From contig NIVC01001797.1 in assembly GCA_002269645.1 (NCBI GenBank), positions 1 through 64,000 on the forward strand: a DNA stretch of 64,000 bases. Direction: 5' to 3'. The stretch comes from Macrostomum lignano. Its lineage: Eukaryota. This document shows positions 3,001 through 55,118 of this stretch, piece by piece (position 1 is the stretch's first letter; every line of letters starts with the position of its first letter). The translations under genes and the position numbers were made by a program. Under the pieces are notes generated by a model. That model did no database searches. It saw only the letters and a program-made list of their open reading frames with translations, and was not told where the DNA came from.

Positions 3001-3983
3001 AAGCAGTACAGCCGGCCAGTGGAAACGGTGCACCGGACGGTGCAGGCGCTGCTGCTGCTGCTCGGGTACTACGAAAAGCGCACACGGGTGAGTCAAGGAC
3101 TACCCAAGTAGAAGGGCGGGAAACTACATTTTCGGGGAACTTTTTGAGAGGCTTGTTTTATTGAAGAAATACATTACGGAGAATGGAGATTTTCATTTTT
3201 TCAGCGTAAAATTTGTAATGATCCATTTGATGGCGGACAAACCCAATGATCATCTTTTGATACGACTTGATTTTCTGTTAGTTCTATAGATATTCGTAGA
3301 GCTTTTTTGTTCAGAAAGTTTGTATTTTGTGTTAATTTTATGAGCGCAATCCTAATTACATGTCCAAACATCGTAAAAATGACACAACTTAATTCATTCG
3401 CAATTTCGCATTGAGGGCGGAGAAGCTTTTTAAATGCTAGGTCGGTGTGTAGTGTACAGAGTGCAGAGCTTGTGTTCTATAGATTGTACTGTGCAGTCAT
3501 TTTGCTGCCCTCACTGGGTCTGTTTACTCGTGAACTTCTCCACGTTACCAACAGAAGTGGCACCGCTGCCAGCCGCTGTTGAAGAGCATCAACAAGTTTG
3601 TCGCGGAGTTTCAGCCGCGCTTCGTTGATCCGCGCATCGCCGCCCGAAGTTCGGAGATTCTGGGCAGCATCGACAAGCGCGAGATCGCCCTGCAGAGCGC
3701 TGCCGCCTTCGCCTTCTACCAATGGGTTCGTTTGAGGAATTTTTCTTGACAATGAGAGTGCAGCATGGCAGCCTGACTCCTTCATCAATCAATTTTACTC
3801 CAGGCGGTCAGGACCACGCAGTCCATCAAGGATGCGACCTCAGTGGACAGTTTTGTTCCAGCCAGCATGGTTCAGCAAAGGTGGATCCTTCGGGTCACGA
3901 TGGAGGAGGACTCTGCGTTGGACTTTCAAGACAAGGGCATTCGCAAGAAGAGTGCACGTCGTCCTCGGACTTCAAAAATTTGA
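1..3983 (+). CDS. KY/hillarin-type (transglutaminase-like family) gene, paralogue 1; 5' end lies outside the window. Ig-like beta repeats, Ala-rich helical region, C-terminal dynein-MTBD-like domain. Several frameshifts in 1-1900
   Basis: Exons approx 1-344, 519-1629, 1720-2631, 2771-3087, 3555-3725, 3804-3983 (TGA), with GT-AG borders. Motifs FEPPHAGQYALAI, FLFLAPDSGYYALVLY, CRFPRAGHYLLRLSF and GALIEPLDRTL resemble the C-terminal repeats of KY/hillarin proteins. The last three exons are in frame and colinear with paralogue 2 (LSELKQYSRP..VQALLLLLG / KWHRCQ / FYQW). Confidence 0.7.
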
Positions 3984-4480
3984 ACTTTAAACTCGCTCTT
4001 CTTTGCTAAAAGTAGGGCAAAGAGTATTTTAAAACTGAATTTTCAAACGCATTGAAATAATGGGAAATCATCTCAAGTGAAATTTTGCAGTCAAGTTTAT
4101 CAATCAATTGAGACTACCAGATTCAAACCTGTCGAATTCCATATGATTTTGTAAACATTACAGAAGATTTTGACTTTTTCATCGTTTTAGCAACATTCGT
4201 GTACTGTACGTGCTTTAAATACCTGCCGAAGTTTTTTCTGTGCAAACGAAAGTCCAAGACTGCCACAGACAACTTTTGGGCTTTCGACCACAGACGAAAT
4301 TTTGTCGGGTATTATAGAATTTAACCAGCACGAGTGAACGTGAAGGAATCCCATTGACATATGGCCAAGCATTCTTAAATGGAATTTACTGCACGGCTTG
4401 GGATTTACTGCACAGTCGCGTTATCTATCTATGTCTATGGCTAAAACCAGAAGAATGCTTTGCCCATAAATCAATGAATC

Positions 4481-4557
4481 TATCACTAGGTTTCGAGTGC
4501 GTAAATAGTCTTAGCACGAGTGCCATAGACTATTTACGCACTCGAAACCTAGAGATA
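4481..4557. repeat. Near-perfect inverted repeat (26-bp perfect arms)
   Basis: CTAGGTTTCGAGTGCGTAAATAGTCT (4486-4511) pairs with AGACTATTTACGCACTCGAAACCTAG (4527-4552). Confidence 0.9.
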
Positions 4558-4584
4558 AATCTACCATTGTTAGATGAGTCATCG

Positions 4585-6440
4585 CAGGGACAACTAAAAC
4601 CCTCGGGACGCAAAACGAGCCAATTCATGGCAAAAAATCTGAGGGGCTCGCTTAAAAGTATTGTTCTATGGCTTTTTCAAGTCTTCTCTGCTATCAGGCA
4701 AATTAAAATTGCTTTAGTTGCGGCCAGCAGTGAAGCTAAGCTGAACTATATCAAGAAAAGCATTTTTTATTCACTTGATGAAATGCCAAGAAAGTGCAGC
4801 GTATTTCCGTGCTCGTCAAATTACAACTCTGAAGCCGTTCGAACACGGACATTTGCGTTTCCCAGAGATCCACAGGAGCGAGAGCGATGGAGAAAGGCGC
4901 TGCCAAATATTCTCCAGGTAAGAAACCAGATCATTTGCTGTCATTACTGCTGCATAATTCCGCTTCAATTCTGCATGCCAGTCTCGTCCAAACAACTTGA
5001 AACCCAAAATTTATTATTTTAGAGAGTGACTGACAATATGGGCGTGTGCGTAAAGCATTGGCCAAGCGATGCTCCAATGGTCAAGAAAAACTCTACCGAA
5101 AGGCCAATTAATCCTCCTTCTGTTTTTAATGGAGTTCCTAGCTCGTGTTTTGTTCAGAACCAAGGTACGTAACTTAAAGATTGCTCAACACTAAGCGTCT
5201 ATATCGATTTTGCCGCTCACAATTATCTTACTTTTATTTTTACTCGTATTTTAGACCAGGACCGACAGGCCGAAAAGCGCGGTGTTCTTTCTGACGCGAG
5301 GTGCGGCGACATCGATGAGATGGACGCTTTTCAGCTGCTTGATTTTTTGCCGGCATGGGAAAGTTTTCGAGCTGAGGTGAAAAATTCGGATGTCGTATCT
5401 CGACATGCACTAAACACAGCTATTCTGAACGAAGACGTTTACTTGTTTACGTTAGATAAAGATGGAGACCTCTCTGTTCGAATTTTTGTCCCACCCAACT
5501 TTCTGATTCGTGCATTCAAACTGCATACACCGATTTCGGTTCGAGACTTGTTGGGATTTCAACCGACACTCAAGCGCTGGATGCTGTTGTCGTGCAGTGC
5601 AAAAATTCCGACGCCAATCCCCAAAGTGAAGTCGAAGCGTTTGTTAGTAGAATCAGTGATGATATAGATTCTGACTCTGATTTGGATCCGTCGCTTCAGT
5701 TTTTGATTCGACAACTTAGCCTTACATTAGTAAATCGGAACAATCGCCGCTATGACATTTCACTAGTGCGACAGTCAGCATTGCTCTACTTGATCAGTAG
5801 TTCGGCTTACTCTTACCTACGGAAGCTATTGCCATTGCCTCATCCCCGAACGCTGCAGCTGCAACTAGCAGGTACAGGAGAAGTTGGCACAGAAACCGAC
5901 GCAGCCGGTGTGATCCAGTCAGTTTTTGCTAGTCTATCAGGAGCTCAGCGAAACTGCGTAATATGTTTGACGAAATGTACATACAACCGTCCGTTCGATA
6001 TCGATGCCGTCACCTTCTGGGTCGAGCCGTCGACGATCCGGACCAGGTTCCTTTATGTACGAGCTACTGACTGTTTGTGTCGTCTTGTCCTTGGAGTTCC
6101 GTATTTGCTTCTATCTTCTTGCCGTTGGAGTTTCATCTTCGCTTTCATCCTTTATATTCTTGCCGTTGGAGTTATATCTTTGCTTTCATCTTTTATCTTC
6201 TTGCCGTTGGAGTTTTTTTGTTGATATGGCGGTTACTTTATTGTAAATAATTATATCACTGGTTCCTATTCTTTAAATTAAATACTCGACATTGCCTCGC
6301 TTTACTATTTAATCTAACCGTTAATGCCTGATAGCAGAGAAGACTTGAAAAAGCCATAGAACAATACTTTTAAGCGAGCCCCTCAGATTTTTTGCCATGA
6401 ATTGGCTCGTTTCGCGTCCCGAGGGTTTTAGTTGTCCCTG
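4585..6440 (+). mobile_element. Internally deleted P-superfamily (THAP9-like) DNA transposon, 1856 bp, 116-bp TIRs
   Basis: TIRs 4585-4700 and 6325-6440 (CAGGGACAACTAAAACC..., one mismatch seen). GAGTCATCG directly flanks both ends (4576-4584, 6441-6449). Encloses a THAP + P-type transposase remnant. Confidence 0.9.
4783..6050 (+). pseudogene. THAP-domain P-element-like transposase, frameshifted and truncated after the first catalytic Asp
   Basis: Exons 4783-4917, 5023-5164, 5255-~6050. THAP motifs MPRKCSVFPC..FAFPRD..RERW, CVKHW, PPSVF. P-transposase motifs SALLYLISSSAYSYLRKLLPLPHPRTL and (frameshifted) DEMYIQPSVRY..LLG. Frameshifts near 5590 and 5965. Confidence 0.85.
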
Positions 6441-6993
6441 GAGTCATCGTGAAGCAATGCACAAAACCGTGCAGGAATGCATTTCTTCGCCTAATGCTTT
6501 TTCAGTGAAATTTTACCATACTCGTTGACATCCACTCCTGCACGCAAAAGCGTGCAAGAATGCCATTCCTGCATGGAGAATCAGCCGACAATGAGACATG
6601 GACGCCATAGATATTTTTGAGCTTATCGAGGCTGATATAGCCTGGCTAAAAACACATAGCCGCAAATAATGAGACCAGTTTGATGGGTGCTGCACTCCAA
6701 TGCTCTAGATTTGCGACCTTCAACAAAGATCAGATTGCTGAAAAGATCGACGCCGCAGTGCCTGCCAATGCGAAGAGGAAGAAGAAATGGGCCGTCAAGC
6801 CAAATGAGCCGTCAAGTCCAGACATGAGGCCATCCTGAACGGCGGACACACTGGATTGCTGGTGCTCAAGCCAATTAAAGAGTGAAGCAACGCCGAATGG
6901 GCCTACTAGCTGCGGATGATTTGAGGCAGGACTTAATTTGAGACCAGTTACATGAAATCTGACCATAGACTACGCGAAAGTAAGGCATCCTAC

Positions 6994-7035
6994 CATGGAC
7001 TTCTATACTTAGCATGCTAAGTATAGAAGTCCATG
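6994..7035. mobile_element. 42-bp perfect palindrome with 8-bp TSD (micro-MITE, CATG termini)
   Basis: CATGGACTTCTATACTTAGCA|TGCTAAGTATAGAAGTCCATG flanked by CATCCTAC at 6986-6993 and 7036-7043. Confidence 0.8.
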
Positions 7036-7352
7036 CATCCTACGAAGAAGAAAGGCCAAGTTAAATAAGCCATTAGTCGGTTTTAAACGGTTTCAACGGA
7101 TTGGGCATTTCAGCCAAAAGTTGGGTAATTGAAATAATGATGTGACAGAATATATTTGAATGAGAATTCTCGGTGTAAAATGTGCGCGATGATTCATCAG
7201 TCTACACTAATGCGTTGCGTCACTGCACGGGAATATCGTGAGTCAGTCTGTGGAGTGTGGAATATAGTTAATACAATGGCTGCAAATTTCATCGGCATTG
7301 CAAGCAGAAGCAATAGCAGTTTAGAATGATGAGCGGCACGCTTAAGCAATCT

Positions 7353-8405
7353 TTATACACCAGGCGTCTTCCAGCACATGACGATATGGCGACCAATCTT
7401 GAAGAAAAATGACAGCCCAGGCTCGTGGCTATAGCTGGCCCAGTACTGTCCCGTAACCATGACAACGTGCCAAAGCTTGCCGAACTGGCCGTCCAGCTGC
7501 TGCTTCAGCCGGCCAGCGACATCTTTCTCATCTTTGCCGCGTCTCTGGGCGTCGCGAAATATTTCAGTCAGGTCCACCTGCATCTCTAGGCCCATGCTGG
7601 AGGCGATGACGGTGACGTCCTCCGGCAGCCGGTTATTCCTCAGACACTCGGCCTTGAGCTGGTTGAGTCGGTAGATTCGCCTATTTTAGGAAAATGCGAT
7701 GGGTTGCCTTCGTGCGTTACCACAAGTTCATTCGACGCATTGCACGAAGTTGGGTTTTGCGAGCTAATGATGACGCAGCAATAGATACTATGTGCTCTAA
7801 AGAATAAAAAGTTCAATTGAATCATGAAAAACAGTATACAGTCTTACGCTTGCTTCGGATTGAGTCCCAGAACGTTGCAGTATTCGTCCAGTGTAATCGC
7901 GCCGTCATCGTTCTCATCAAATAGCTTCATCCATTTCTGAAAAAGCGAATTCGGTAAATGCCATGACTTGGATGTTTGTGTGTAACTATTACTCAATACT
8001 ATCTGCGAGTCTGATGAATGCAGCTAAATAACATTTCAGCGACCATTTTACCTACCTTGATACCAACATAAGATCTGTTAGATCAGTTTAAACCCTTAAA
8101 TACCGGAGTCCGGATCACCGTGTGAATAATTACACAAAGCATTGGAAACACTGGAAGCTACAAACCTCGCCAAAATTGGCCTCAAACTGGCTGCTGCTGG
8201 TCATGTAGGCCGCTAATTCATCCGGTGTGATGGACTCGCTCCGATCCTTGTCGACCGCAAAGAACGCATCAAGGAAGGGATTCTGTGCAGCTGCCTCCTC
8301 TGCTGCGACGCGTCCCGGTGACAACGGCGGTGGAGCAGGCGATGTTGAGCCCGAAGCGGAGGCAGTGGAGTGCGCTGGCGACACAGAGAGCGACATGCTT
8401 CGCAT
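7353..8405 (-). CDS. Tegument allergen-like (TAL) protein: two EF-hands plus a dynein-light-chain-like domain, ~218 aa, 3 exons
   Basis: Exons 8405-8166, 7936-7848, 7680-7353 join in frame. EF loops DKDRSESITPDE and DENDDGAITLDE. C-terminus LPEDVTVIASSM..LDGQFGKLWHVVMVTGQYWASYSHEPGLSFFF..MCWKTP closely matches the Sm22.6/SmTAL pattern ([29 protein letters not shown]..WRTP). Confidence 0.9.
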
Positions 8406-8947
8406 ATAGAAATATAGCTAGTAGCCTTATTCCCAGCGGGTGCACTGCGTTTTCCACTACTGCTTTGTATTAAACCCTGGCTCTCCATGAGCAATGACTA
8501 AGCGCAGTCTAAAAATAAGCTGCAGAGCAGCGCTGTGTTCTCTGCATCGTCGCGATAATAAAAATGCCACTCCTGCAGAAGAACCCAGATTTAATTTGTG
8601 ATGCGAGATTAAGGCTGAGTCCCGATCAAGAACGGATCAAGGGTAGCTGGGGCCAGGACAGTTCAGGACTTCGCGTAAATAAAACATGCAAGTTTTCTAT
8701 ACTAGCCCACTTTTAACCACAATGCTTGGTTGCTCCAGCTTCTCTGAGCAGTTCTTAAGCTGATCATCCCTCATCCGCAATCTGTCTGCTGGCAACCTAG
8801 AGTCTCCACTGTTAAATTAATTATTTAAATGTTTCTTAAGTTACCCCTACCACCCGTTTCGCCTGATGACACTCCTAACCAATTTAGTAAATGGACGTTA
8901 GCGACTGCTAGAAAAACAAAGGAAAACAAACTTTGAAATGATTGACT

Positions 8948-8995
8948 CAAGGACCACTAGAAGTTACCGTTGTAGGTAACTTCTAGTGGTCCTTG
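8948..8995. mobile_element. 48-bp hairpin with 8-bp TSD (micro-MITE, CAAGG..CCTTG termini)
   Basis: 21-bp perfect arms CAAGGACCACTAGAAGTTACC with a 6-nt loop, flanked by GATTGACT at 8940-8947 and 8996-9003. Confidence 0.8.
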
Positions 8996-10418
8996 GATTG
9001 ACTCATCCCGTGAATCGACAAATCCAATATAAGATTGTTTAAAAGTAAATTTATGTCCATGTAGTGATAGAAAGCTTAGATATTACTACAAATATTCTGC
9101 ACGTTGCCTTTAAATCCTTTGACTGCCTGGGATCTTAAGTTTGGATATCCAGTTGTAAATTAGTTGCTGTTATGTTTTTTTTCTTTTCTCTAGGAATTTC
9201 TGCTGCTATATAGTGAGCTAAGTCGTTTTTATATACAGCAAGTTTTAGCCAAAGCATTTGAATTAGCGCATGTTTAGATGCATATTTTTTTAATCAAAAA
9301 CTATTGAATTGAAAGTAAATATTTAATTAAGATTCCGTTTCCTTCTGTCTAATATTCGAATGTGTAGAGCAGTGCCAAAGACTCCAATCAATATTTCAAA
9401 AGAATCTAAAAGATTTTCGCTATTTAGTAGTTTAAATATTTTTGCTAGAGCGACAATCTACAAAAAAGTTCAACAACGTTGAAATTTTTTGTTTGTCTTT
9501 TTGCAACTAAGGTTATCCGCGGCAAATTGACGTAGGAGCACATTAACAGGCAAGTCAGTGTTATTAACACTTTGAAATGGTACCGCATGTCGTGAAACAG
9601 GTCACTGATTCACTGTTATTAATTTTATACCTACTTCCCGTTCTCACCCAGAGTAGTTTTTTACTATAATATCTAAATATACTAAATCTCTAATATTTGT
9701 ATGCTTGTCCATAACGCTCTAGTAAGATATACTATTACTATGTTTCAAAGCACCGCACCACTTAGCTGATATTAGCAAAAATAAAACTTAAGCAATTCAC
9801 GTTGTCGTTTTGTTGATTATATTTTAGAATTTACATTTGCTACTTGCTACAAGTAAATATAGTATATGCATTTATAATTTCGAAATGCTGTTTTTAAGGC
9901 TGATTATTAGAGTTCTTAGGGGTGAATATGTGTTGCAAACTAGTCACGTGCAATCAGATACAATTAGATTGTACTCTTTCCAATTTTTGGGTTGGCTTGT
10001 TTTGCCTCTTTTTATTTCAAATTTTGTATTGCATTTTCATCCTCTTTCTGTATTACTTATTTTAAGACCTAAAGCATAGTCCTAAAAATTAAGGACTTTA
10101 GCTTATTGTTTTCTTAACTTAAAAATTTTAAATAGGCTTTTAAAATAGATTTTCTAATTCAAAGAGCTAAAATATTTAAACGGAGTTAGAATATCATTTT
10201 CATCTTTAATAATTTTAACCAACATATATAAAAACAATACCGTTATAATATTAATAACTTTGTTGTAACTGGAGCTATGAGTATTTTCCTATACTAAAAA
10301 CTGAAATACGTTAAATTACCATGCATAACAAAACGCTTGCTTTCCATGTTATGCCTTAGTTTCGCATTTTTATAGTGAATGATGATACACGTGTGTTTTC
10401 ATTCATGTTCCAAAGAAT

Positions 10419-13400
10419 ATGCCAGAAGGAAACATTTTACAAGTACTAGACTACTACAAAAATTATGCGCTAGAAGGAGATGAAATTCCATTAAATAACT
10501 ATCTTTTGAGTTCCCCAAAAGGATTTCCAACTTTGCGCAGCCTGGTTGACAGTCAGCTGCAAGCTGCCAAACCGAGTGCGGCGAGGGCCAACCAGCCACA
10601 GCCAACTCCGTGTAGCAGACGAAAAGAAGAGCTGTTTCAGATTCAGAAATTCACCGATATTGATCAGGCAGCAGAGTCGGTGCAACTGAACTGGCAGGAC
10701 GACTGGGAGACGCTTTCTCAGAAATTGTTTCGGAATTCGACCGGCGATCTCGAAAAAGTGCGCTCTGCTTTTGTGTTTACCTGCAGAGACTGGAACAACG
10801 GACTGCCAGCTCGCAACAAAGAGAGCTCAGCGTATAGGCTTATTCGAGAGAGAAACTATGCAGAGATTTTTGAGAACTTGGTCAGGTAAGGACTGCTCAT
10901 TCTGAAGAGTTCAGGTTCAGTCATTCAGTTTGTTAAGGAAATTAATTTTTGTAGCAAATTGTGTGTAAAGATTGTTGAAGAAGAGCACGTGAAGCCTGTA
11001 TGTACGATTTGATGCGAGAGTGCCTTGAAAGTGCTAAATTTTTATTTTAGAAAAGAGACTATCGCATTGGGAGTGAAACCTAGTAGATTAGCCTCTTAGC
11101 AGACCAGTGTCTTAGTTGATCAGTGTCTTAGTAGACCAGTGTCTTAGCAGACCAGTGTCTTAGCAGACCAGTGTCTTAGTAGACCAGTGTCTTAGTAGAC
11201 CAGTGTCTCAGTAGACCAGTGTCTTAGTAGACTAGTGTCTTAGTAAACCAGTGTCTTAGTAAACCAGTGTCTTAGTAAACCAGTGTCTTAGTAAACCAGT
11301 GTCTTAGTAAACCAGTGTCTTAGTAAACCAGTGTCTTAGTAAACCAGTGTCTTAGTAAACCAGTGTCTTAGTAGACCAGTGTCTTAGTAGACCAGTGTCT
11401 TAGTAGACCAGTGTCTTAGTTGATCAGTGTCTTAGTAGACCAGTGTCTTAGTAAACCAGTGTCTAAGTAGATCAGTGTCTTGGTAGACAAGTGTCTTAGT
11501 AGACCAGTGTCTTAGTAGACCAGTGTCTCAGTAAACCAGTGTCTAAGTAGATCAGTGTCTTAGCAGACCAGTGTCTTAGTTGATCAGTGTCTTAGTAAAC
11601 CAGTGTCTTAGTAAACCAGTGTCTTAGTAAACCAGTGTCTTAGTAAACCAGTGTCTTAGTAAACCAGTGTCTTAGTAAACCAGTGTCTTAGTAAACCAGT
11701 GTCTTAGTAAACCAGTGTCTTAGTAGACCAGTGTCTTAGTAGACCAGTGTCTTAGTAGACCAGTGTCTTAGTTGATCAGTGTCTTAGTAGACCAGTGTCT
11801 TAGTAAACCAGTGTCTAAGTAGATCAGTGTCTTGGTAGACAAGTGTCTTAGTAGACCAGTGTCTTAGTAGACCAGTGTCTCAGTAAACCAGTGTCTAAGT
11901 AGATCAGTGTCTTAGCAGACCAGTGTCTTAGTAGACCAGTGTCTTAGTTGATCAGTGTCTTAGTAAACCAGTGTCTTAGTAAACCAGTGTCTTAGTAAAC
12001 CAGTGTCTTAGTAAACCAGTGTCTTAGTAAACCAGTGTCTTAGTAAACCAGTGTCTCAGTAAACCAGTGTCTAAGTAGATCAGTGTCTTGGTAGACAAGT
12101 GTCTTAGTAGACCAGTGTCTTAGTAGACCAGTGTTTTAGTAGACCAGTGTCTTCGCAGACCAGTGTCTTAGTAGACCAGTGTCTTAGTAGACCAGTGTCT
12201 TAGTAAACCAGTGTCCTCGTAGACCAGTGTCTTCGCAGACCAGTGTCTTAGTAGACCAGTGTCTTAGCAGACCAGTGTCTTAGCAGACCAGTGTCTTAGC
12301 GGATCAGTGTCTTAGTAGACCAGTGTCTTAGCAGACCAGTGTCTTAGCGGACCAGTGCACCGAGAGTCTTGAGGCTCGATCGCACCTCCATAAAATGGAG
12401 TAAATTTTTGCGTGATCACGCAACTTGTACATATTCTTTAGTCCCTTTGTGCGTGAGTGCTGCGACTTGACGGTTCATCTAGCGTAGCGGTGCACTAACC
12501 AAGAGTGACTTAGTGAGCCTTTTCCCATAGTAATGAAAGTATAGCAAACGCAGGAAAATATTTCAGAGCCGGAGGCGTACCAATAGAACGAATCGAAGGC
12601 TGGAAGAAGTCTGCAGACTCCAAAGTTGGCTTCCATGTCAGACGATCGGTAAATCCTTGGCACGCCTGCTTCGTGAGCGGAGAATGGCGACTGGTTGACG
12701 TCCACTGGGCTGCCTCGTCGGTATTCAGCAGCCGCACTGGCAGATACCGCGAGCTCGACAAAGATGGCGAGTTGTCCCAGACCCTGACAGCCAGTGAGAC
12801 CCCTCAGATTGAGGAGAAGTTCGGCCGCAACGAGTTTTTCTTTCTAACTGATCCCGAGAAGCTGGTAATGAGCCACTACCCGGACGATAGGAGCTGGCAG
12901 CTGTGTAAGAAGCCGATCAAGTTCGAGCAGTTCGAGCAGATGCCGCACTATTTTGCTGGCTCTGAGCAGGCCATGCCGCACTGCTGGCAGGTGGAGCCGC
13001 TCAACTATCTGAAAAATGTCATTCTAGCTGAAGAGGAAGGCCGAGTTGAGATTCTTTTCAGGTAATTTATTTTACAATTTTGGACGTGCAAACTTTTCAA
13101 CAGCTCGTCGTACACCCGTACAAAGTGCCGATTGGAATGGATATTGCAGAGTGCCTGACGCCGAGCTGCTTCGAGATTTAGAATTCGATGCCAAGGTCAG
13201 CATCGCCAAAAGGTGCTTGTCGAGTTCTGATGCGCCAGCATCCAACAGGTTGAAACATGGCAGAATCATTCACTGCGACCGGCTGGGTCCTGCACCATCG
13301 GACATTGTCCAGGTTGTGTTTCGGTCACCTTGCGCTGGCAAGTTCGCTCTGACAGTTCGAATTAAAAAGAAGTATGGAGGCAGCGGCTGGGCTCGACTGG

Positions 13401-13510
13401 CCACCTACATTGTGCACTGTCCTGTGGTAGGTGTCCCGTGGTTTGTCTGCCTCAGTTTGTCTTTCCTTAGTCTATAGGGAAAGCCATGTGTTTCTCTGTC
13501 ATCAGCATTG

Positions 13511-13607
<97 letters not shown>

Positions 13608-15133
13608 TATCATCATCATCATACTGTGCAATTTTATTTTCAACATTACGAGCGTATTAGAGATCGCCTACTGAAGAGTAGCAAGTAAAGAATTTTAAGC
13701 GACTTATGTTGCGTGCGAAAGGCGCACTAAAAGTTTTGAATTATTAAAGTTTATTACAATTTATAAAAAAATTGAAACCATCTGCTTCAAAAAGCAGTCC
13801 TTGTCTATCGTGAGTTACACTTGCACTTTCCTGCTAATCTGTGAAATTATATTGTCAATGCAGGTATCTAAAGAATCAAAATTATCAAAGTCATCTCAAC
13901 CGCCAAATCCAGAACCAGAGTCAGAGTGCGGCCCAAATCTCAAAACAAGGATCAGTGATCATAGATCCGCCAAATCAAGACACAAATCCAAAGCCATATT
14001 CAAGGCCAAATTCAGATCTAGATGCAACTCCAAAACCAGAGCCAAAACCATACATCTGGAGCCAAAACCGGAGTTCAAGCCCTTTGGGTCGAAAGTTTCC
14101 TATGGGAAATTTGACCAGAGAGCAACTGGCTCAGTTGCGCAGCTACCCGAAGCCGCCAAAATGGGAATTCAAGGCGATCAAAGCCATACTGCTCATGCTG
14201 GGCTTTTACGAAGGACGGAGCAACGTGAGTGGCAGGACGGTTTTGTAGGGTGGCAACAATTTCAAGCATACGAAACGTTTGCTAATTTAAATTTCAGAAA
14301 TGGGTCCGCTGTCAGCAACTAATCTCTGCCATACCTCAGGCGGCCAACGATTTAATTATCGAATCCGTTCATCCGGAAATCGCTGCCAGATGCCTGCAAC
14401 TCGTTCAGTCGAAATCTGGCACGCCAACGGCCAAGGATAACCCGGAAGAGAAAGCTTCGTATATCTTCAGGGAGTGGGTGAGTTTGCGATGCAATTGCGA
14501 TGTGACTGAGGGTCAGGGCATGAGATAGGTGTCGGGAGGGGCAGAGGGGCAGCGCGTGAGGTGGGTGTCGGGAGGGGCAGGGGGAGCACGTGGAGGTGAG
14601 TGTCGGGAGGGGCAGGGGGCGTGTGGAGGTGAGTGTCGGGAGGGGCAGGGGGCGCGTGGAGGTGGGTGTCGGGAGTGGCAGGGGGGCGCGTGGAGATGGG
14701 TGGTCGAGAGGGGCAGGGGAGCGCGTGGAGGTGGGGTGTCGGGAGGGGCAGGAGGAGCGCGCAAGGTGTGGGTATCGGGAACGGGTCTTTAGTTTCAATT
14801 TATTCGCTGAAATAAAATTTCTGTCAGAACTTTATGTATGCAATCTAACATTAAATTCTCAAGGTTGAAAAGAACGCCAACGCAGTCAAGGAGGTGACGC
14901 CGCCCGGCGATTTCAAAGCAGCTGACAAACAGCGGCAGGTGCAGCTGTTCGGCATCACACCCGAGGAGGAGGCCCATTGGGACTGGGAGGACAATATAAA
15001 AAAGTCTGAAGTGGCCCAGAAATTCATCTGCTTTTGCGACTATTGTCACGTTGCGATTTATAATAACGATTTAAAGATCCACCTGCACTGCAACGTGTCC
15101 AGAGCGAATGGCTTGCGCAAAAATGCGCTGTGA
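10419..15133 (+). CDS. KY/hillarin-type gene, paralogue 2: degenerate transglutaminase-like core, one Ig-like repeat, Pro-rich linker, dynein-MTBD-like domain, C-terminal CxxC..H..C motif
   Basis: Exons 10419-10885, 12567-13061, 13150-13426, 13864-14224, 14298-14477, 14864-15133. Motifs DLEKVRSAF, NPWHACFVSGEWRLVDVHW and EFFFLTDPEKLVMSHYPDDRSWQL are typical of KY/hillarin. Exon 4 needs a net frameshift, and the start codon is uncertain. Confidence 0.8.
11099..12357. repeat. 16-bp minisatellite (AGACCAGTGTCTTAGT)n in intron 1 of paralogue 2
   Basis: Read directly; variant units recur in longer blocks. Confidence 0.95.
13511..13622. repeat. (CAT)n microsatellite, intronic
   Basis: Read directly; source of the poly-His and poly-Ile artefact ORFs. 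Confidence 0.95.
14520..14765. repeat. ~32-bp G-rich intronic minisatellite
   Basis: Unit GGAGGTGAGTGTCGGGAGGGGCAGGGGGCGCGT. Confidence 0.9.
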
Positions 15134-16832
15134 AACTAAATGGTGATTACAGTCTGAACATTTCGTAGAAACTGGGAACCTTTTGACTCGTTAACGTTTT
15201 ACAAATGGCAATGCTCGTATGTAAGACTAGGTTAATCTCTTGTGTTATGAAAATATTTTGCACTTCTAAAGTACTAAAGAGAAAGTAAATGCATGATAGC
15301 GGAGACAGGAGAGTCAGGTTATGGCTGGGAGGAAATGCGAGAAAGGAATCTGAGAAATCGAGGAGAGGGAGAGCAGAGATGGAGAGAATAAATAGAGAAG
15401 AGAGGAAGAGAATAGAAAGAGAGAAGATGCGAGGAAGGTGGGCGTCGGCAACACTGCTGGTACCCCAGTTTCTGCTTTTTCATATCCTAATATTGCCGTT
15501 GTGAACTCGCGTATTCTTGTTCGAATCAATTTGCTGCTTTGCTGCATTCTTTATACATAAACTTTGATTTGCAGATTTAATATATTCATCATTTGTCAAC
15601 AACATTATTTATTAGCACATAGGACTTCAGAATCATTTTCGGCGAGTTTTTACAACAGATTGGCGCTGCTTTTTTAATCTAGAAATAAATTAACTTTTTA
15701 CAATAAAGCTGGCCATTTTACTCAAGAAGCGCCCGTTATTGGTTTTTAAAAATAAATATTCAGAAAGGCTGGCATGAGCAAAATACTTTTTGATTTTCTT
15801 TTTTTGAAGGGAGTGTGAACCTTCAATTGCGGTATCTACATGTACATGAAATTCTGCGGCTTGCAGTGATTAAGCTAGGCTCAGGGTTTAAATTGGGTTT
15901 CAAGTTGTCACATTGGCTTTCAGGATGCTAAACTAAACTTGGTTTTACAGAGCCGTATTGGTGTTAGTAGGGCACAGTTAGGCGTCCAGGAGGGCGCGTA
16001 TAAGTTATCAAGGGCCGTTATTCAGATGTCTATCTGGGCCAGAACAAACCGGGTGCCACTGCCCCACATTTTCATATAGGTGTCAGTAGCGCATTGTACA
16101 ATGTAACCTAATGAATCTCCATGAACTGATGACCTCCCAAAAATACATAGAGAGGTTTGACCGCCGGCATGAAATCCATACCTTGAATGAGGTTGACTAT
16201 CCATGAATTAATACCTATTTATCTTCATATATTGAATTTGCCATGGTGCAGTTTTGATTGTTTGAAATTTGTTTTTTTAAATTCTATATTTCTGGAAAAT
16301 ATATAAAGTAAATTTACGTACTCGTAATTTTGTTTTTCTTAATAGGTTACTCAGTAACATTTTAAAGTGGTTTTCCTGGTTTCTAAAAAACTTAAGGTAG
16401 GTAAAATTAAACACCTAACTTTTAACATTTAGGGCTCTGAGCTCAGACTAGCTGTTGACGAATCTTTTGGAAGATATTGTTTTATATTGATTTTTCTGGG
16501 CATTTTTTAGAGTTACATTACTCATACCAGACTGTAAGTATAGGCCTAGACTATACAGTCTACAAACTCCTCCATTTGACATTGTGTCGTGCCATCTCAA
16601 CTTCAGGATAGGCCTACTATACTGAGTGATAGTGTCAGTGATAGGCCTACTGAATAATTGTATAACGTTTAAAAAACTTTTCATAATCACAATAAGAAGA
16701 TATTCCTACGTTCCATTAATATTGTCAAACCATAAAATTAAAATAAGTTAGGCCTTCTTAGCTAGGCTACTTTATTTGTTGGTCCTAAGTCAGTTAAGTA
16801 TTGAATCTAGTCCAGACTAGACAAATTTTATC

Positions 16833-34568
<17,736 letters not shown>

Positions 34569-38906: not shown

Positions 38907-55118
<16,212 letters not shown>

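What the first reader, a model, noticed from the sequence alone, without database searches (positions are those of the whole stretch)
7353..8405. Tegument-allergen-like (EF-hand + DLC) gene in what looks like a free-living flatworm
Seen: a complete TAL architecture with two canonical 12-residue EF loops and a ~40-aa Ser/Pro/Ala N-terminal extension. Established: TALs (Sm22.6, Sm21.7, FhCaBPs) are widely described as specific to parasitic flatworms and are IgE and vaccine targets, and one of their EF-hands is often degenerate. Inference: the host's rich DNA-transposon content fits a free-living species better than a neodermatan, in which case TALs predate parasitism and the tegument. Host identity is not proven from this window.
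Basis: partly seen in the sequence, partly recalled or inferred. Interest (0 to 1): 0.75.

Follow-up and report, generated by a model that had tools for sequence, protein, structure and literature searches.

The report
Parasite "tegument allergen" gene in free-living flatworm

Summary
On the minus strand, 7353-8405, a three-exon gene with canonical GT/AG introns encodes a 218-aa protein. [quoted passage not shown]

Its best solved relative, aligned over the full length, is the Fasciola TAL protein FhCaBP4 (E 1e-34). The predicted fold also hits FhCaBP4 first.

The host is Macrostomum lignano, a free-living flatworm that branched off well before the parasites. The protein is 217/218 identical to a GenBank "hypothetical protein", and the DNA is 98.2-98.8% identical to two M. 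lignano contigs.

This is not a lone gene. At least six distinct groups of M. lignano proteins have the same architecture. Every other named relative is from a trematode, cestode or monogenean.

The first intron lies at the same codon boundary and phase as in two tapeworm TAL genes. That argues for common descent rather than an independent domain fusion.

Papers up to 2026 still call TALs specific to parasitic flatworms, and I found none that reports them in free-living species.

One detail needs correcting. Only EF-hand 2 is fully canonical; EF-hand 1 has Glu at loop position 6.

The sequences are already public, so this is a new member of a known family with moderate interest.

The parts
7353..8405 (-). 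Whole TAL-type gene, start codon to stop codon: 3 exons, 2 introns, 218 aa
   Evidence: The same exon edges appear when the GenBank paralogue is mapped by tblastn.
8166..8405 (-). Exon 1 (aa 1-80): N-terminal extension plus EF-hand 1. Phase-0 donor GAG|GTTTGT.
8283..8405 (-). Ser/Ala/Pro-rich N-terminal extension (aa 1-41) with three Ser-Pro motifs (S9, S22, S29). Predicted disordered.
   Evidence: Composition. SP motifs. Mean pLDDT 56-70 per ten-residue block. Coordinates.
8217..8252 (-). EF-hand loop 1, DKDRSESITPDE (aa 52-63). Liganding residues are present; Glu at loop position 6.
7937..8165 (-). Intron 1 (229 nt, GT..AG, phase 0), lying immediately before the conserved K-W of helix 3. Same position and phase as in two cestode TAL genes.
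7848..7936 (-). Exon 2 (aa 81-110, the last codon split): EF-hand 2
7883..7918 (-). EF-hand loop 2, DENDDGAITLDE (aa 87-98). Fully canonical; matches PROSITE PS00018.
7681..7847 (-). Intron 2 (167 nt, GT..AG, phase 2) in the linker. Same phase as in cestode TALs, offset by two codons.
7353..7680 (-). Exon 3 (aa 110-218 plus the TAA stop): helical linker and DLC-like domain
7365..7616 (-). Dynein-light-chain-like domain (aa 132-215). It includes W180-H181 and the TAL-type beta4-beta5 loop GQYWASYSHEPG (SHEP at 7419-7430).
   Evidence: Pfam PF01221, E 3.4e-16. FhCaBP2 DLC domain, E 4e-21. Foldseek TM 0.80-0.92 normalised to target. Motif, and PMC12347358.

Best explanation
[quoted passage not shown] It is one of at least six TAL-type gene groups in that species.

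**What is shown.**
- The gene is intact and spliced.
- It encodes a two-domain protein: an EF-hand pair, a long helical linker and a DLC-like alpha/beta domain.
- Sequence, predicted fold and one exactly shared intron tie it to neodermatan TALs.

**What is inferred about mechanism, by analogy with characterised TALs.**
- The protein is cytosolic. It has no hydrophobic N-terminus.
- It forms a homodimer through its DLC-like domain, as FhCaBP4 and SmTAL1-3 do.
- It binds Ca2+ mainly at the canonical EF-hand 2, and probably also at EF-hand 1.
- Ca2+ binding changes the EF pair and its coupling to the DLC domain. The dimer would then act as a calcium-responsive adaptor for partner proteins, possibly dynein-associated or submembrane ones.
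- The disordered Ser/Pro/Ala N-terminus, with three Ser-Pro sites, is a plausible regulatory tail.

**Evolutionary consequence.** The EF-hand plus DLC fusion existed in the common ancestor of Macrostomorpha and the parasitic Neodermata. It is therefore older than both parasitism and the syncytial tegument.
For: **Domains and relatives.**
- Pfam finds both domains above their cut-offs.
- The full-length match to FhCaBP4 (PDB 9voa) covers query 33-217 against chain 4-190, E 1e-34.
- The FhCaBP2 DLC domain scores 4e-21, against 2e-9 for the best canonical dynein light chain hit, yeast Dyn2.
- The structure model has mean pLDDT 88.8. Its Foldseek top hit is 9voa (E 5e-15, 181 columns, 34% identity), followed by the FhCaBP2 DLC domain and LC8.
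- The TAL-type loop GQYWASYSHEPG corresponds to the FhCaBP4 loop LTGSYWMKFSHEPFMS (PMC12347358).

**Host.**
- The protein is 217/218 identical to M. lignano BOX15_Mlig008204g3.
- The DNA is 98.2-98.8% identical to contigs of 615 kb and 152 kb.
- The lineage is Macrostomorpha.

**Family distribution.**
- Against 1.84 billion representative proteins, 94 hits score E<1e-10.
- I looked up 30 of them by cluster. All named ones are Trematoda, Cestoda, Monogenea or M. lignano.
- The five other M. lignano groups all carry EF-hand and Dynein_light domains.

**Gene structure.**
- Intron 1 has the same position and phase 0 in Schistocephalus and Spirometra TAL genes.
- Intron 2 is phase 2 in all three, two codons apart.

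**Biochemistry of relatives.** Dimerisation and Ca2+ binding are documented in PMC4300400 and PMC12347358.
Against: - No expression, localisation, Ca2+-binding or dimerisation data exist for this protein. All mechanistic steps are by analogy.
- TAL paralogues differ biochemically. SmTAL3 binds no Ca2+ (PMC4300400), so analogy is weak for specifics.
- EF-hand 1 fails the strict PROSITE pattern.
- The three M. lignano copies are too similar to show purifying selection: 2 exon and 3 intron substitutions.
- The deep phylogeny is unresolved, so orthology to any particular SmTAL cannot be stated.
- I could not test planarians or non-flatworm phyla directly. The named proteins reflect which genomes are annotated in public databases.
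Confidence: 0.88

Rival explanations
1. Functional rival. The protein is a dedicated dynein or ciliary subunit: a Ca2+-sensing light chain of axonemal or cytoplasmic dynein in the multiciliated epidermis. It would not be a general TAL-like adaptor, and parasites later redeployed it in the unciliated tegument.
For: - The C-terminal domain has the LC8 fold (TM 0.90-0.93 normalised to LC8 chains) and keeps W180-H181.
- Sm20.8 was reported to associate with a dynein light chain (cited in PMC4300400 and PMC3317908).
- Genes of the 'dynein light chain superfamily' network mark the ciliary plates of the schistosome miracidium (PMC11349301).
- M. lignano has a ciliated epidermis (established knowledge).
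Against: - The domain is only about 23% identical to LC8. It scores far better against TAL DLC domains (4e-21 against 2e-9).
- It carries the TAL-type SHEP loop rather than LC8's THET.
- Known TALs work in an unciliated syncytium.
- There is no localisation data for M. lignano.
Confidence: 0.15
2. Convergence. Macrostomum fused an EF-hand pair to a DLC domain independently, so the gene only resembles TALs.
For: Both domains are common and short. The deep nodes of the tree are unresolved.
Against: - A single collinear alignment covers both domains and the linker, at 34-45% identity to trematode, monogenean and cestode TALs.
- Intron 1 is identical in position and phase in cestode TALs.
- The TAL-specific beta4-beta5 motif is shared.
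- Six M. lignano groups interleave with neodermatan groups in nearest-neighbour comparisons.
Confidence: 0.03
3. Artefact of origin. The gene comes from a parasite contaminant in the assembly, or from recent horizontal transfer out of a neodermatan.
For: None beyond the literature's expectation that TALs are restricted to parasites.
Against: - The locus lies inside M. lignano contigs of 615 kb and 152 kb and recurs as near-identical paralogous copies with the same flanks.
- The closest named neodermatan protein is only 42% identical.
- Five more divergent M. lignano groups exist on other contigs.
Confidence: 0.01
4. Decaying duplicate. The window copy is an unexpressed paralogue in a duplicated genome, and only other copies function.
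For: - The M. lignano assembly carries at least three near-identical copies.
- The window copy differs from the deposited protein by G217D.
- Selection could not be measured.
Against: - The reading frame is intact, and all four splice sites and both start and stop codons are canonical.
- The 500-nt flanks show no substitutions against the other copies, only 2-10 gapped columns.
- Residue 217 lies outside the Pfam domain.
Confidence: 0.03

Closest known systems
Fasciola hepatica FhCaBP4 (PDB 9voa) and FhCaBP2 (5fwz/5fx0): trematode TAL/CaBP proteins
   Same: - Same domain order and size for the core: EF-hand pair, helical linker, DLC-like domain.
- 34% identity over 181 aligned columns, sequence E 1e-34.
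- In FhCaBP4, EF-hand 2 is the main Ca2+ site (PMC12347358). Here it is the loop that is fully canonical.
- The SHEP loop is shared.
   Different: - The window protein has a 41-aa disordered Ser/Ala/Pro extension that FhCaBP4 lacks.
- The predicted inter-domain orientation differs (overall TM 0.40-0.46). This may only reflect a monomer model set against a crystal dimer.
- The host is free-living and has no tegument.
Schistosoma mansoni SmTAL1-13 (Sm22.6, Sm21.7, Sm20.8 and others)
   Same: - Same family and architecture.
- A multigene family within one species: 13 in S. mansoni (PMC3317908) and at least 6 groups in M. lignano.
- Schistosoma 'Tegument antigen' P0010 (206 aa) has the window-type protein as its best match among the 112 hits compared (35% over 202 aa). 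It also carries a short N-terminal extension.
   Different: - SmTALs are tegument-associated IgE antigens. Neither property applies, or is known, here.
- Orthology to a particular SmTAL is unresolved.
Clonorchis sinensis 20.8-kDa tegumental protein (PDB 5x2d, 5x2e)
   Same: Both its EF-hand domain (E 3e-10) and its DLC domain (E 1.7e-8) match the corresponding halves of the window protein.
   Different: It is more distant than the Fasciola proteins, and it is a parasite tegument protein.
Canonical dynein light chain LC8 (DYNLL1/2, Dyn2)
   Same: - Same fold for residues 132-215 (rmsd 1.0-1.3 A, TM about 0.9 normalised to LC8).
- The W-H pair is conserved.
   Different: - LC8 is a single-domain protein of 89 aa. 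Identity is only about 21-24%.
- LC8 has THET where this protein has SHEP.
- LC8 has no EF-hands.

Membership tests
TAL / flatworm CaBP family (EF-hand + DLC-like) | N-terminal pair of EF-hand motifs | tested here: met
   PF13499 at residues 46-102, 35.8 bits against cut-off 30. Loops at 52-63 and 87-98.
TAL / flatworm CaBP family (EF-hand + DLC-like) | C-terminal dynein-light-chain-type-1-like domain | tested here: met
   PF01221 at residues 132-215, 59.8 bits against cut-off 29.1.
TAL / flatworm CaBP family (EF-hand + DLC-like) | Collinear full-length similarity to characterised members, not just to each domain family | tested here: met
   FhCaBP4: query 33-217 against chain 4-190, E 1e-34. 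Single-stretch matches spanning about residues 42-216 to trematode, cestode and monogenean proteins.
TAL / flatworm CaBP family (EF-hand + DLC-like) | DLC domain of the TAL type (closer to TAL DLCs than to LC8; GxYW...SHEP beta4-beta5 loop) | tested here: met
   E 4e-21 for FhCaBP2 DLC against 2e-9 for the best canonical light chain hit. Motif GQYWASYSHEPG (PMC12347358).
TAL / flatworm CaBP family (EF-hand + DLC-like) | Three-dimensional architecture like solved TALs | tested here: met
   Structure model with mean pLDDT 88.8. Foldseek rank 1 is 9voa; ranks 2-3 are FhCaBP2 DLC. Domain folds match; the relative orientation does not superpose.
TAL / flatworm CaBP family (EF-hand + DLC-like) | Shared gene structure with neodermatan TAL genes | tested here: met
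   Three exons. Intron 1 has identical position and phase 0 in Schistocephalus and Spirometra. Intron 2 is phase 2, offset by two codons. Trematode genes were not examined.
TAL / flatworm CaBP family (EF-hand + DLC-like) | Reversible Ca2+ binding by at least one EF-hand (not universal: SmTAL3 binds none) | not testable with these tools
   Sequence only. EF2 matches PS00018. EF1 keeps the ligands at positions 1, 3, 5 and 12 but has Glu at position 6.
TAL / flatworm CaBP family (EF-hand + DLC-like) | Homodimerisation | not testable with these tools
   Shown for SmTAL1-3 and FhCaBP4 (PMC4300400, PMC12347358). Only a monomer was modelled here.
TAL / flatworm CaBP family (EF-hand + DLC-like) | Tegument localisation and IgE reactivity (the origin of the name) | not testable with these tools
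   M. lignano has a cellular ciliated epidermis, not a neodermal tegument (established knowledge). No expression data were found.
TAL / flatworm CaBP family (EF-hand + DLC-like) | Restriction to parasitic flatworms, as stated in the literature | tested here: not met
   The host is M. lignano. This is a claim about distribution, not a molecular feature. The result revises the claim rather than excluding the gene.
Canonical LC8 dynein light chain | Single-domain protein of about 89 aa, highly conserved in sequence | tested here: not met
   218 aa with an N-terminal EF-hand domain. 21-24% identity to animal LC8 chains.
Calmodulin / troponin-C-like four-EF-hand sensors | Four EF-hands in two lobes | tested here: not met
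   Only two EF loops. Calmodulin matches are weak: E 4e-4 or worse, partial.

The most novel reading that the evidence does not exclude
The TAL family had already diversified into several subfamilies in a free-living ancestor of Macrostomorpha and Neodermata. Under this reading it served a general calcium-dependent role in the epidermis or its progenitors, and the parasite tegument later inherited and expanded it. M. lignano has RNAi and transgenesis (my own knowledge). It would then be the first tractable, non-parasitic system in which to work out what TALs do. A 2026 preprint calls that function 'largely unknown' (10.64898/2026.04.22.720116), after decades of study as vaccine and drug targets.
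Probability: 0.45. Interest if true: 0.6.

Novelty: new member of a known kind. Interest (0 to 1): 0.45.

Why it matters
TALs are promoted as parasite-specific drug and vaccine targets, and as markers of the neodermatan tegument. Papers as late as 2025-2026 repeat that they occur only in trematodes or only in parasitic flatworms.

Finding a well-conserved multigene TAL complement in Macrostomum lignano has three consequences:
- It corrects that distribution.
- It dates the EF-hand/DLC fusion to before parasitism and before the tegument.
- It offers a free-living laboratory flatworm for functional work on a family whose cellular role is still unknown.

It does not weaken TALs as targets with respect to the vertebrate host. 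No relative from outside flatworms was identified among the named hits.

The sequences are already in GenBank and UniProt under uninformative names. The contribution is therefore recognition and evidence of homology, not a new molecule.

Tried and rejected
1. **Word-indexed protein search.** It returned only the near-identical M. lignano protein for the single query, and 9 hits for a 47-sequence profile. It was too insensitive for this family. The exhaustive representative search was used instead.

2. **Neighbour-joining tree.** I built it from 72 full-length TALs with 200 bootstraps (a first attempt timed out).
   - Deep nodes have about 0% support, so no orthology or rooting claim is made.
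   - Only local groups hold: Mlig010873 with Mlig009131 at 100, and Mlig005207 with the Schistocephalus group at 65.

3. **Exon against intron divergence between the window copy and two paralogous copies.** There were only 5 substitutions in the gene, so this says nothing about selection.

4. **Literature.**
   - Nine full-text searches and several targeted reads found no explicit report of TALs in free-living flatworms.
   - The closest is Table 3 of PMC3510090.
   - The BLAST sheets of PMC12058154, which compare the schistosome proteome with free-living flatworms, were not retrievable as text.
   - PMC6349046 is not held.

5. **M. lignano gene identifiers.** They occur in no searchable paper.

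Ten long ORFs gave no transposase domain.

7. **Contamination, horizontal transfer and convergence.** I considered and rejected all three (see rival explanations).

8. **Unused search.** I left the third large protein search unused, because identifying the environmental or Logan relatives would not change the verdict.

Full report
**1. What is in the sequence**

- Exon 1 runs 8405..8166 (240 nt, aa 1-80). Its donor is GAG|GTTTGT.
- Exon 2 runs 7936..7848 (89 nt). It follows the acceptor TTTTTCAG and ends at the donor GC|GTAAGA.
- Exon 3 runs 7680..7353. It follows AAAATAG and ends in TAA.
- The joined coding sequence is 657 nt and translates without interruption into 218 aa.
- The window holds no second copy.

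**2. Domains**

Pfam gives EF-hand_7 at residues 46-102 (35.8 bits, cut-off 30) and Dynein_light at 132-215 (59.8 bits, cut-off 29.1, E 3.4e-16).

The second EF loop, DENDDGAITLDE (87-98), matches PROSITE PS00018. The first, DKDRSESITPDE (52-63), retains Asp1, Asp3, Ser5 and Glu12 but has Glu at position 6, so it fails the strict pattern. 'Two canonical loops' is therefore nearly right but not exactly.

Residues 1-41 contain 10 Ser, 9 Ala and 6 Pro, with three Ser-Pro motifs. The structure model gives this stretch low confidence, with mean pLDDT 56-70 per block of ten residues. No alternative start codon exists between M4 and M68.

**3. Family**

Against all solved structures:
- The best match is full-length Fasciola hepatica FhCaBP4 (9voa; query 33-217 against chain 4-190; E 1e-34).
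- Next come the DLC-like domain of FhCaBP2 (E 4e-21 and 4.5e-20) and both halves of the Clonorchis 20.8-kDa tegumental protein.
- Canonical dynein light chains score 2e-9 or worse, and calmodulins 4e-4 or worse.

An AlphaFold2 model built on a 47-sequence family alignment has mean pLDDT 88.8 and pTM 0.74. It shows four EF helices, a long linker helix (107-125) and an alpha2/beta4 LC8-type domain.
- Foldseek ranks FhCaBP4 first (E 5e-15, 181 columns, 34% identity), then FhCaBP2 DLC, then dozens of LC8 chains.
- LC8 chains superpose with TM about 0.9 normalised to the target and rmsd 1.0-1.3 A.
- The low whole-chain TM to 9voa (0.40-0.46) reflects a different relative placement of the two domains.

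The beta4-beta5 loop reads GQYWASYSHEPG. It corresponds to the LTGSYWMKFSHEPFMS loop highlighted for FhCaBP4 (PMC12347358).

**4. Host**
- The only close database protein is 'hypothetical protein BOX15_Mlig008204g3 [Macrostomum lignano]'. It differs at one residue: G217 in the window, D217 in the deposit.
- That protein is encoded on two contigs of assembly GCA_002269645.1.
- About 11-12 kb of the window around the gene aligns to both contigs at 98.2-98.8% identity. The window is thus a further copy or allele of the same M. lignano locus.
- NCBI taxonomy places the species in Rhabditophora, Macrostomorpha. This is a free-living lineage outside Neodermata.

**5. How widespread the family is**

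An exhaustive HMMER scan of 1.84 billion representative proteins found 265 hits with E up to 1e-3 and 94 with E up to 1e-10. Most of the best hits are 165-210 aa and align in one stretch across both domains.

I could look up names for 30 clusters.
- Six are M. lignano: Mlig008204 (the window type), A0A1I8GY77, Mlig015343, Mlig010873, Mlig009131 and Mlig005207.
- The other named clusters are trematodes (Opisthorchis/Clonorchis, Trichobilharzia, Schistosoma, Paragonimus, Fasciola, Echinostoma, Calicophoron), cestodes (Taenia/Echinococcus, Spirometra) and a monogenean (Cichlidogyrus). Further cestode hits (Dibothriocephalus, Schistocephalus, Spirometra) were named directly by the profile search.
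- The unnamed ones come from metagenomes, Tara Oceans transcripts, Logan assemblies or UniParc-only records. They cannot be assigned to an organism.

All five other M. lignano groups have Pfam EF-hand and Dynein_light hits. In Mlig015343 the EF-hand pair is below the cut-off. Two of the groups are adjacent genes.

No named protein from a planarian or from another phylum appeared. Planarian proteomes are scarcely represented in NCBI or UniProt, so this absence says little.

**6. Common descent rather than convergence**
- In Schistocephalus solidus (L003) and Spirometra (L004), TAL genes also have three exons.
- Their first intron is phase 0 and falls between the last codon of the EF1-EF2 connector and the conserved K/N-W that opens the next helix: ...GAC|GTAAGT ... 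CAG|AAATGG.
- That is exactly where the M. lignano intron 1 lies: ...GAG|GTTTGT ... CAG|AAATGG.
- Their second intron is phase 2 in the linker, two codons downstream of the M. lignano phase-2 intron in an ungapped alignment.
- This adds to collinear 34-45% identity over both domains and the shared SHEP loop. An independent fusion is therefore very unlikely.
- Contamination or recent transfer is excluded by the large native contigs, the paralogous copies with matching flanks, and the 42% ceiling on identity to any named neodermatan protein.

**7. Phylogeny**

A neighbour-joining tree of 72 full-length members is unresolved at depth. I make no claim about which SmTAL is the orthologue.

Two weak hints suggest several subfamilies predate the split. 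Mlig005207, which has an LC8-like THET loop, groups with the Schistocephalus clade (bootstrap 65). The M. lignano proteins also fall in at least three separate groups.

**8. Likely mechanism (inferred)**

Characterised TALs are cytosolic homodimers.
- SmTAL1 and SmTAL2 bind Ca2+ reversibly, and SmTAL3 does not (PMC4300400).
- FhCaBP4 crystallises as a homodimer. EF-hand 2 is its main Ca2+ site, and the authors propose allosteric coupling between the EF pair and the DLC domain (PMC12347358).
- Sm20.8 was reported to associate with a dynein light chain (cited in PMC4300400 and PMC3317908).

The M. lignano protein has a canonical EF-hand 2, a nearly canonical EF-hand 1, the W-H pair of LC8 and no hydrophobic leader. 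I therefore propose a cytosolic, DLC-mediated dimer. Ca2+ occupancy, first at EF2, would alter how it engages partners. The Ser-Pro-rich tail is a candidate regulatory segment.

The cell type is unknown. A ciliary or dynein-linked role in the ciliated epidermis is the main functional rival.

**9. What the literature says**
- TALs are described as 'found only in parasitic flatworms' (PMC4300400, 2015).
- They are 'found only in trematodes' (PMC12347358, 2025).
- They are 'specific to parasitic flatworms' (bioRxiv 10.64898/2026.04.22.720116, 2026).
- One paper says 'unique to the platyhelminths' (PMC10212073, 2023).
- The nearest thing to a prior record is a 2012 Echinococcus EST survey. Its pan-platyhelminth table lists a 'Tegumental protein' cluster with BLAST bit scores of 62.8 in Schmidtea and 50.4 in M. 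lignano ESTs, without comment (PMC3510090).
- I found no paper that names TALs in a free-living flatworm (searches listed under Tried and rejected). Subscription journals are not covered.

**10. Verdict**

The gene is a new, unrecognised member of a known family. The sequences themselves are already public. Interest is moderate. The finding corrects a repeated claim, dates the family to before parasitism and the tegument, and points to a tractable model for a family whose function remains unknown.

Noticed in passing
window 11094-12357: There are 79 tandem copies of a 16-bp satellite (TCTTAGTAGACCAGTG, 91% matches). It lies about 2.7 kb from the TAL gene and is also present in the two paralogous M. 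lignano contigs. The whole window carries more than 20 minisatellite arrays with periods of 14-139 bp.
   Followed up: partly
window 30038-30928 (+): An ORF has Ras, EF_assoc_2 (E 1.9e-28) and EF-hand Pfam hits. It looks like an exon of a Miro-type mitochondrial Rho GTPase gene.
   Followed up: no
window 6994-7035 and 8948-8995: Two perfect palindromes with 21-nt arms flank the TAL gene, one about 320 bp past the stop and one about 540 bp upstream of the start. Their sequences differ from each other, and each is unique in the window. Their meaning is unknown.
   Followed up: partly
window 41259-42080 (+): An ORF has a weak MgtE_N hit (E 1.4e-7). It overlaps a 36-bp tandem array (41301-41683), so the hit is probably an artefact of the repeat.
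   Followed up: no
window, ten longest tested ORFs (556-53859): No transposase or integrase domain was found in any of them.
   Followed up: partly
L003 (Schistocephalus solidus UYSU01032250.1) 3001-15468: TAL exons occur as a tandem array: exon-1-like at 3001, 5101, 7199 and 10016; exon-2-like at 9847 and 12719; exon-3-like at 13493 and 15091. The deposited 203-aa model spans 10.9 kb and may join exons of neighbouring copies.
   Followed up: partly
M. lignano proteins PAA82679/PAA82680 and PAA92644/PAA92645 (P0181, P0033, P0177): Two divergent M. lignano TAL-type genes (Mlig009131 and Mlig010873) have consecutive accessions on the same contigs. They form a tandem pair, duplicated again in the assembly.
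   Followed up: no
P0004 (JGI/IMG metagenome, 1274-bp contig): This is the closest non-Macrostomum relative of the window protein (39-41% identity). It is a 281-aa environmental sequence with its own N-terminal extension of about 100 aa, rich in Asn, Ser and Gln. Its source mislabels it as a 'MerR regulator'. The organism is unknown.
   Followed up: partly
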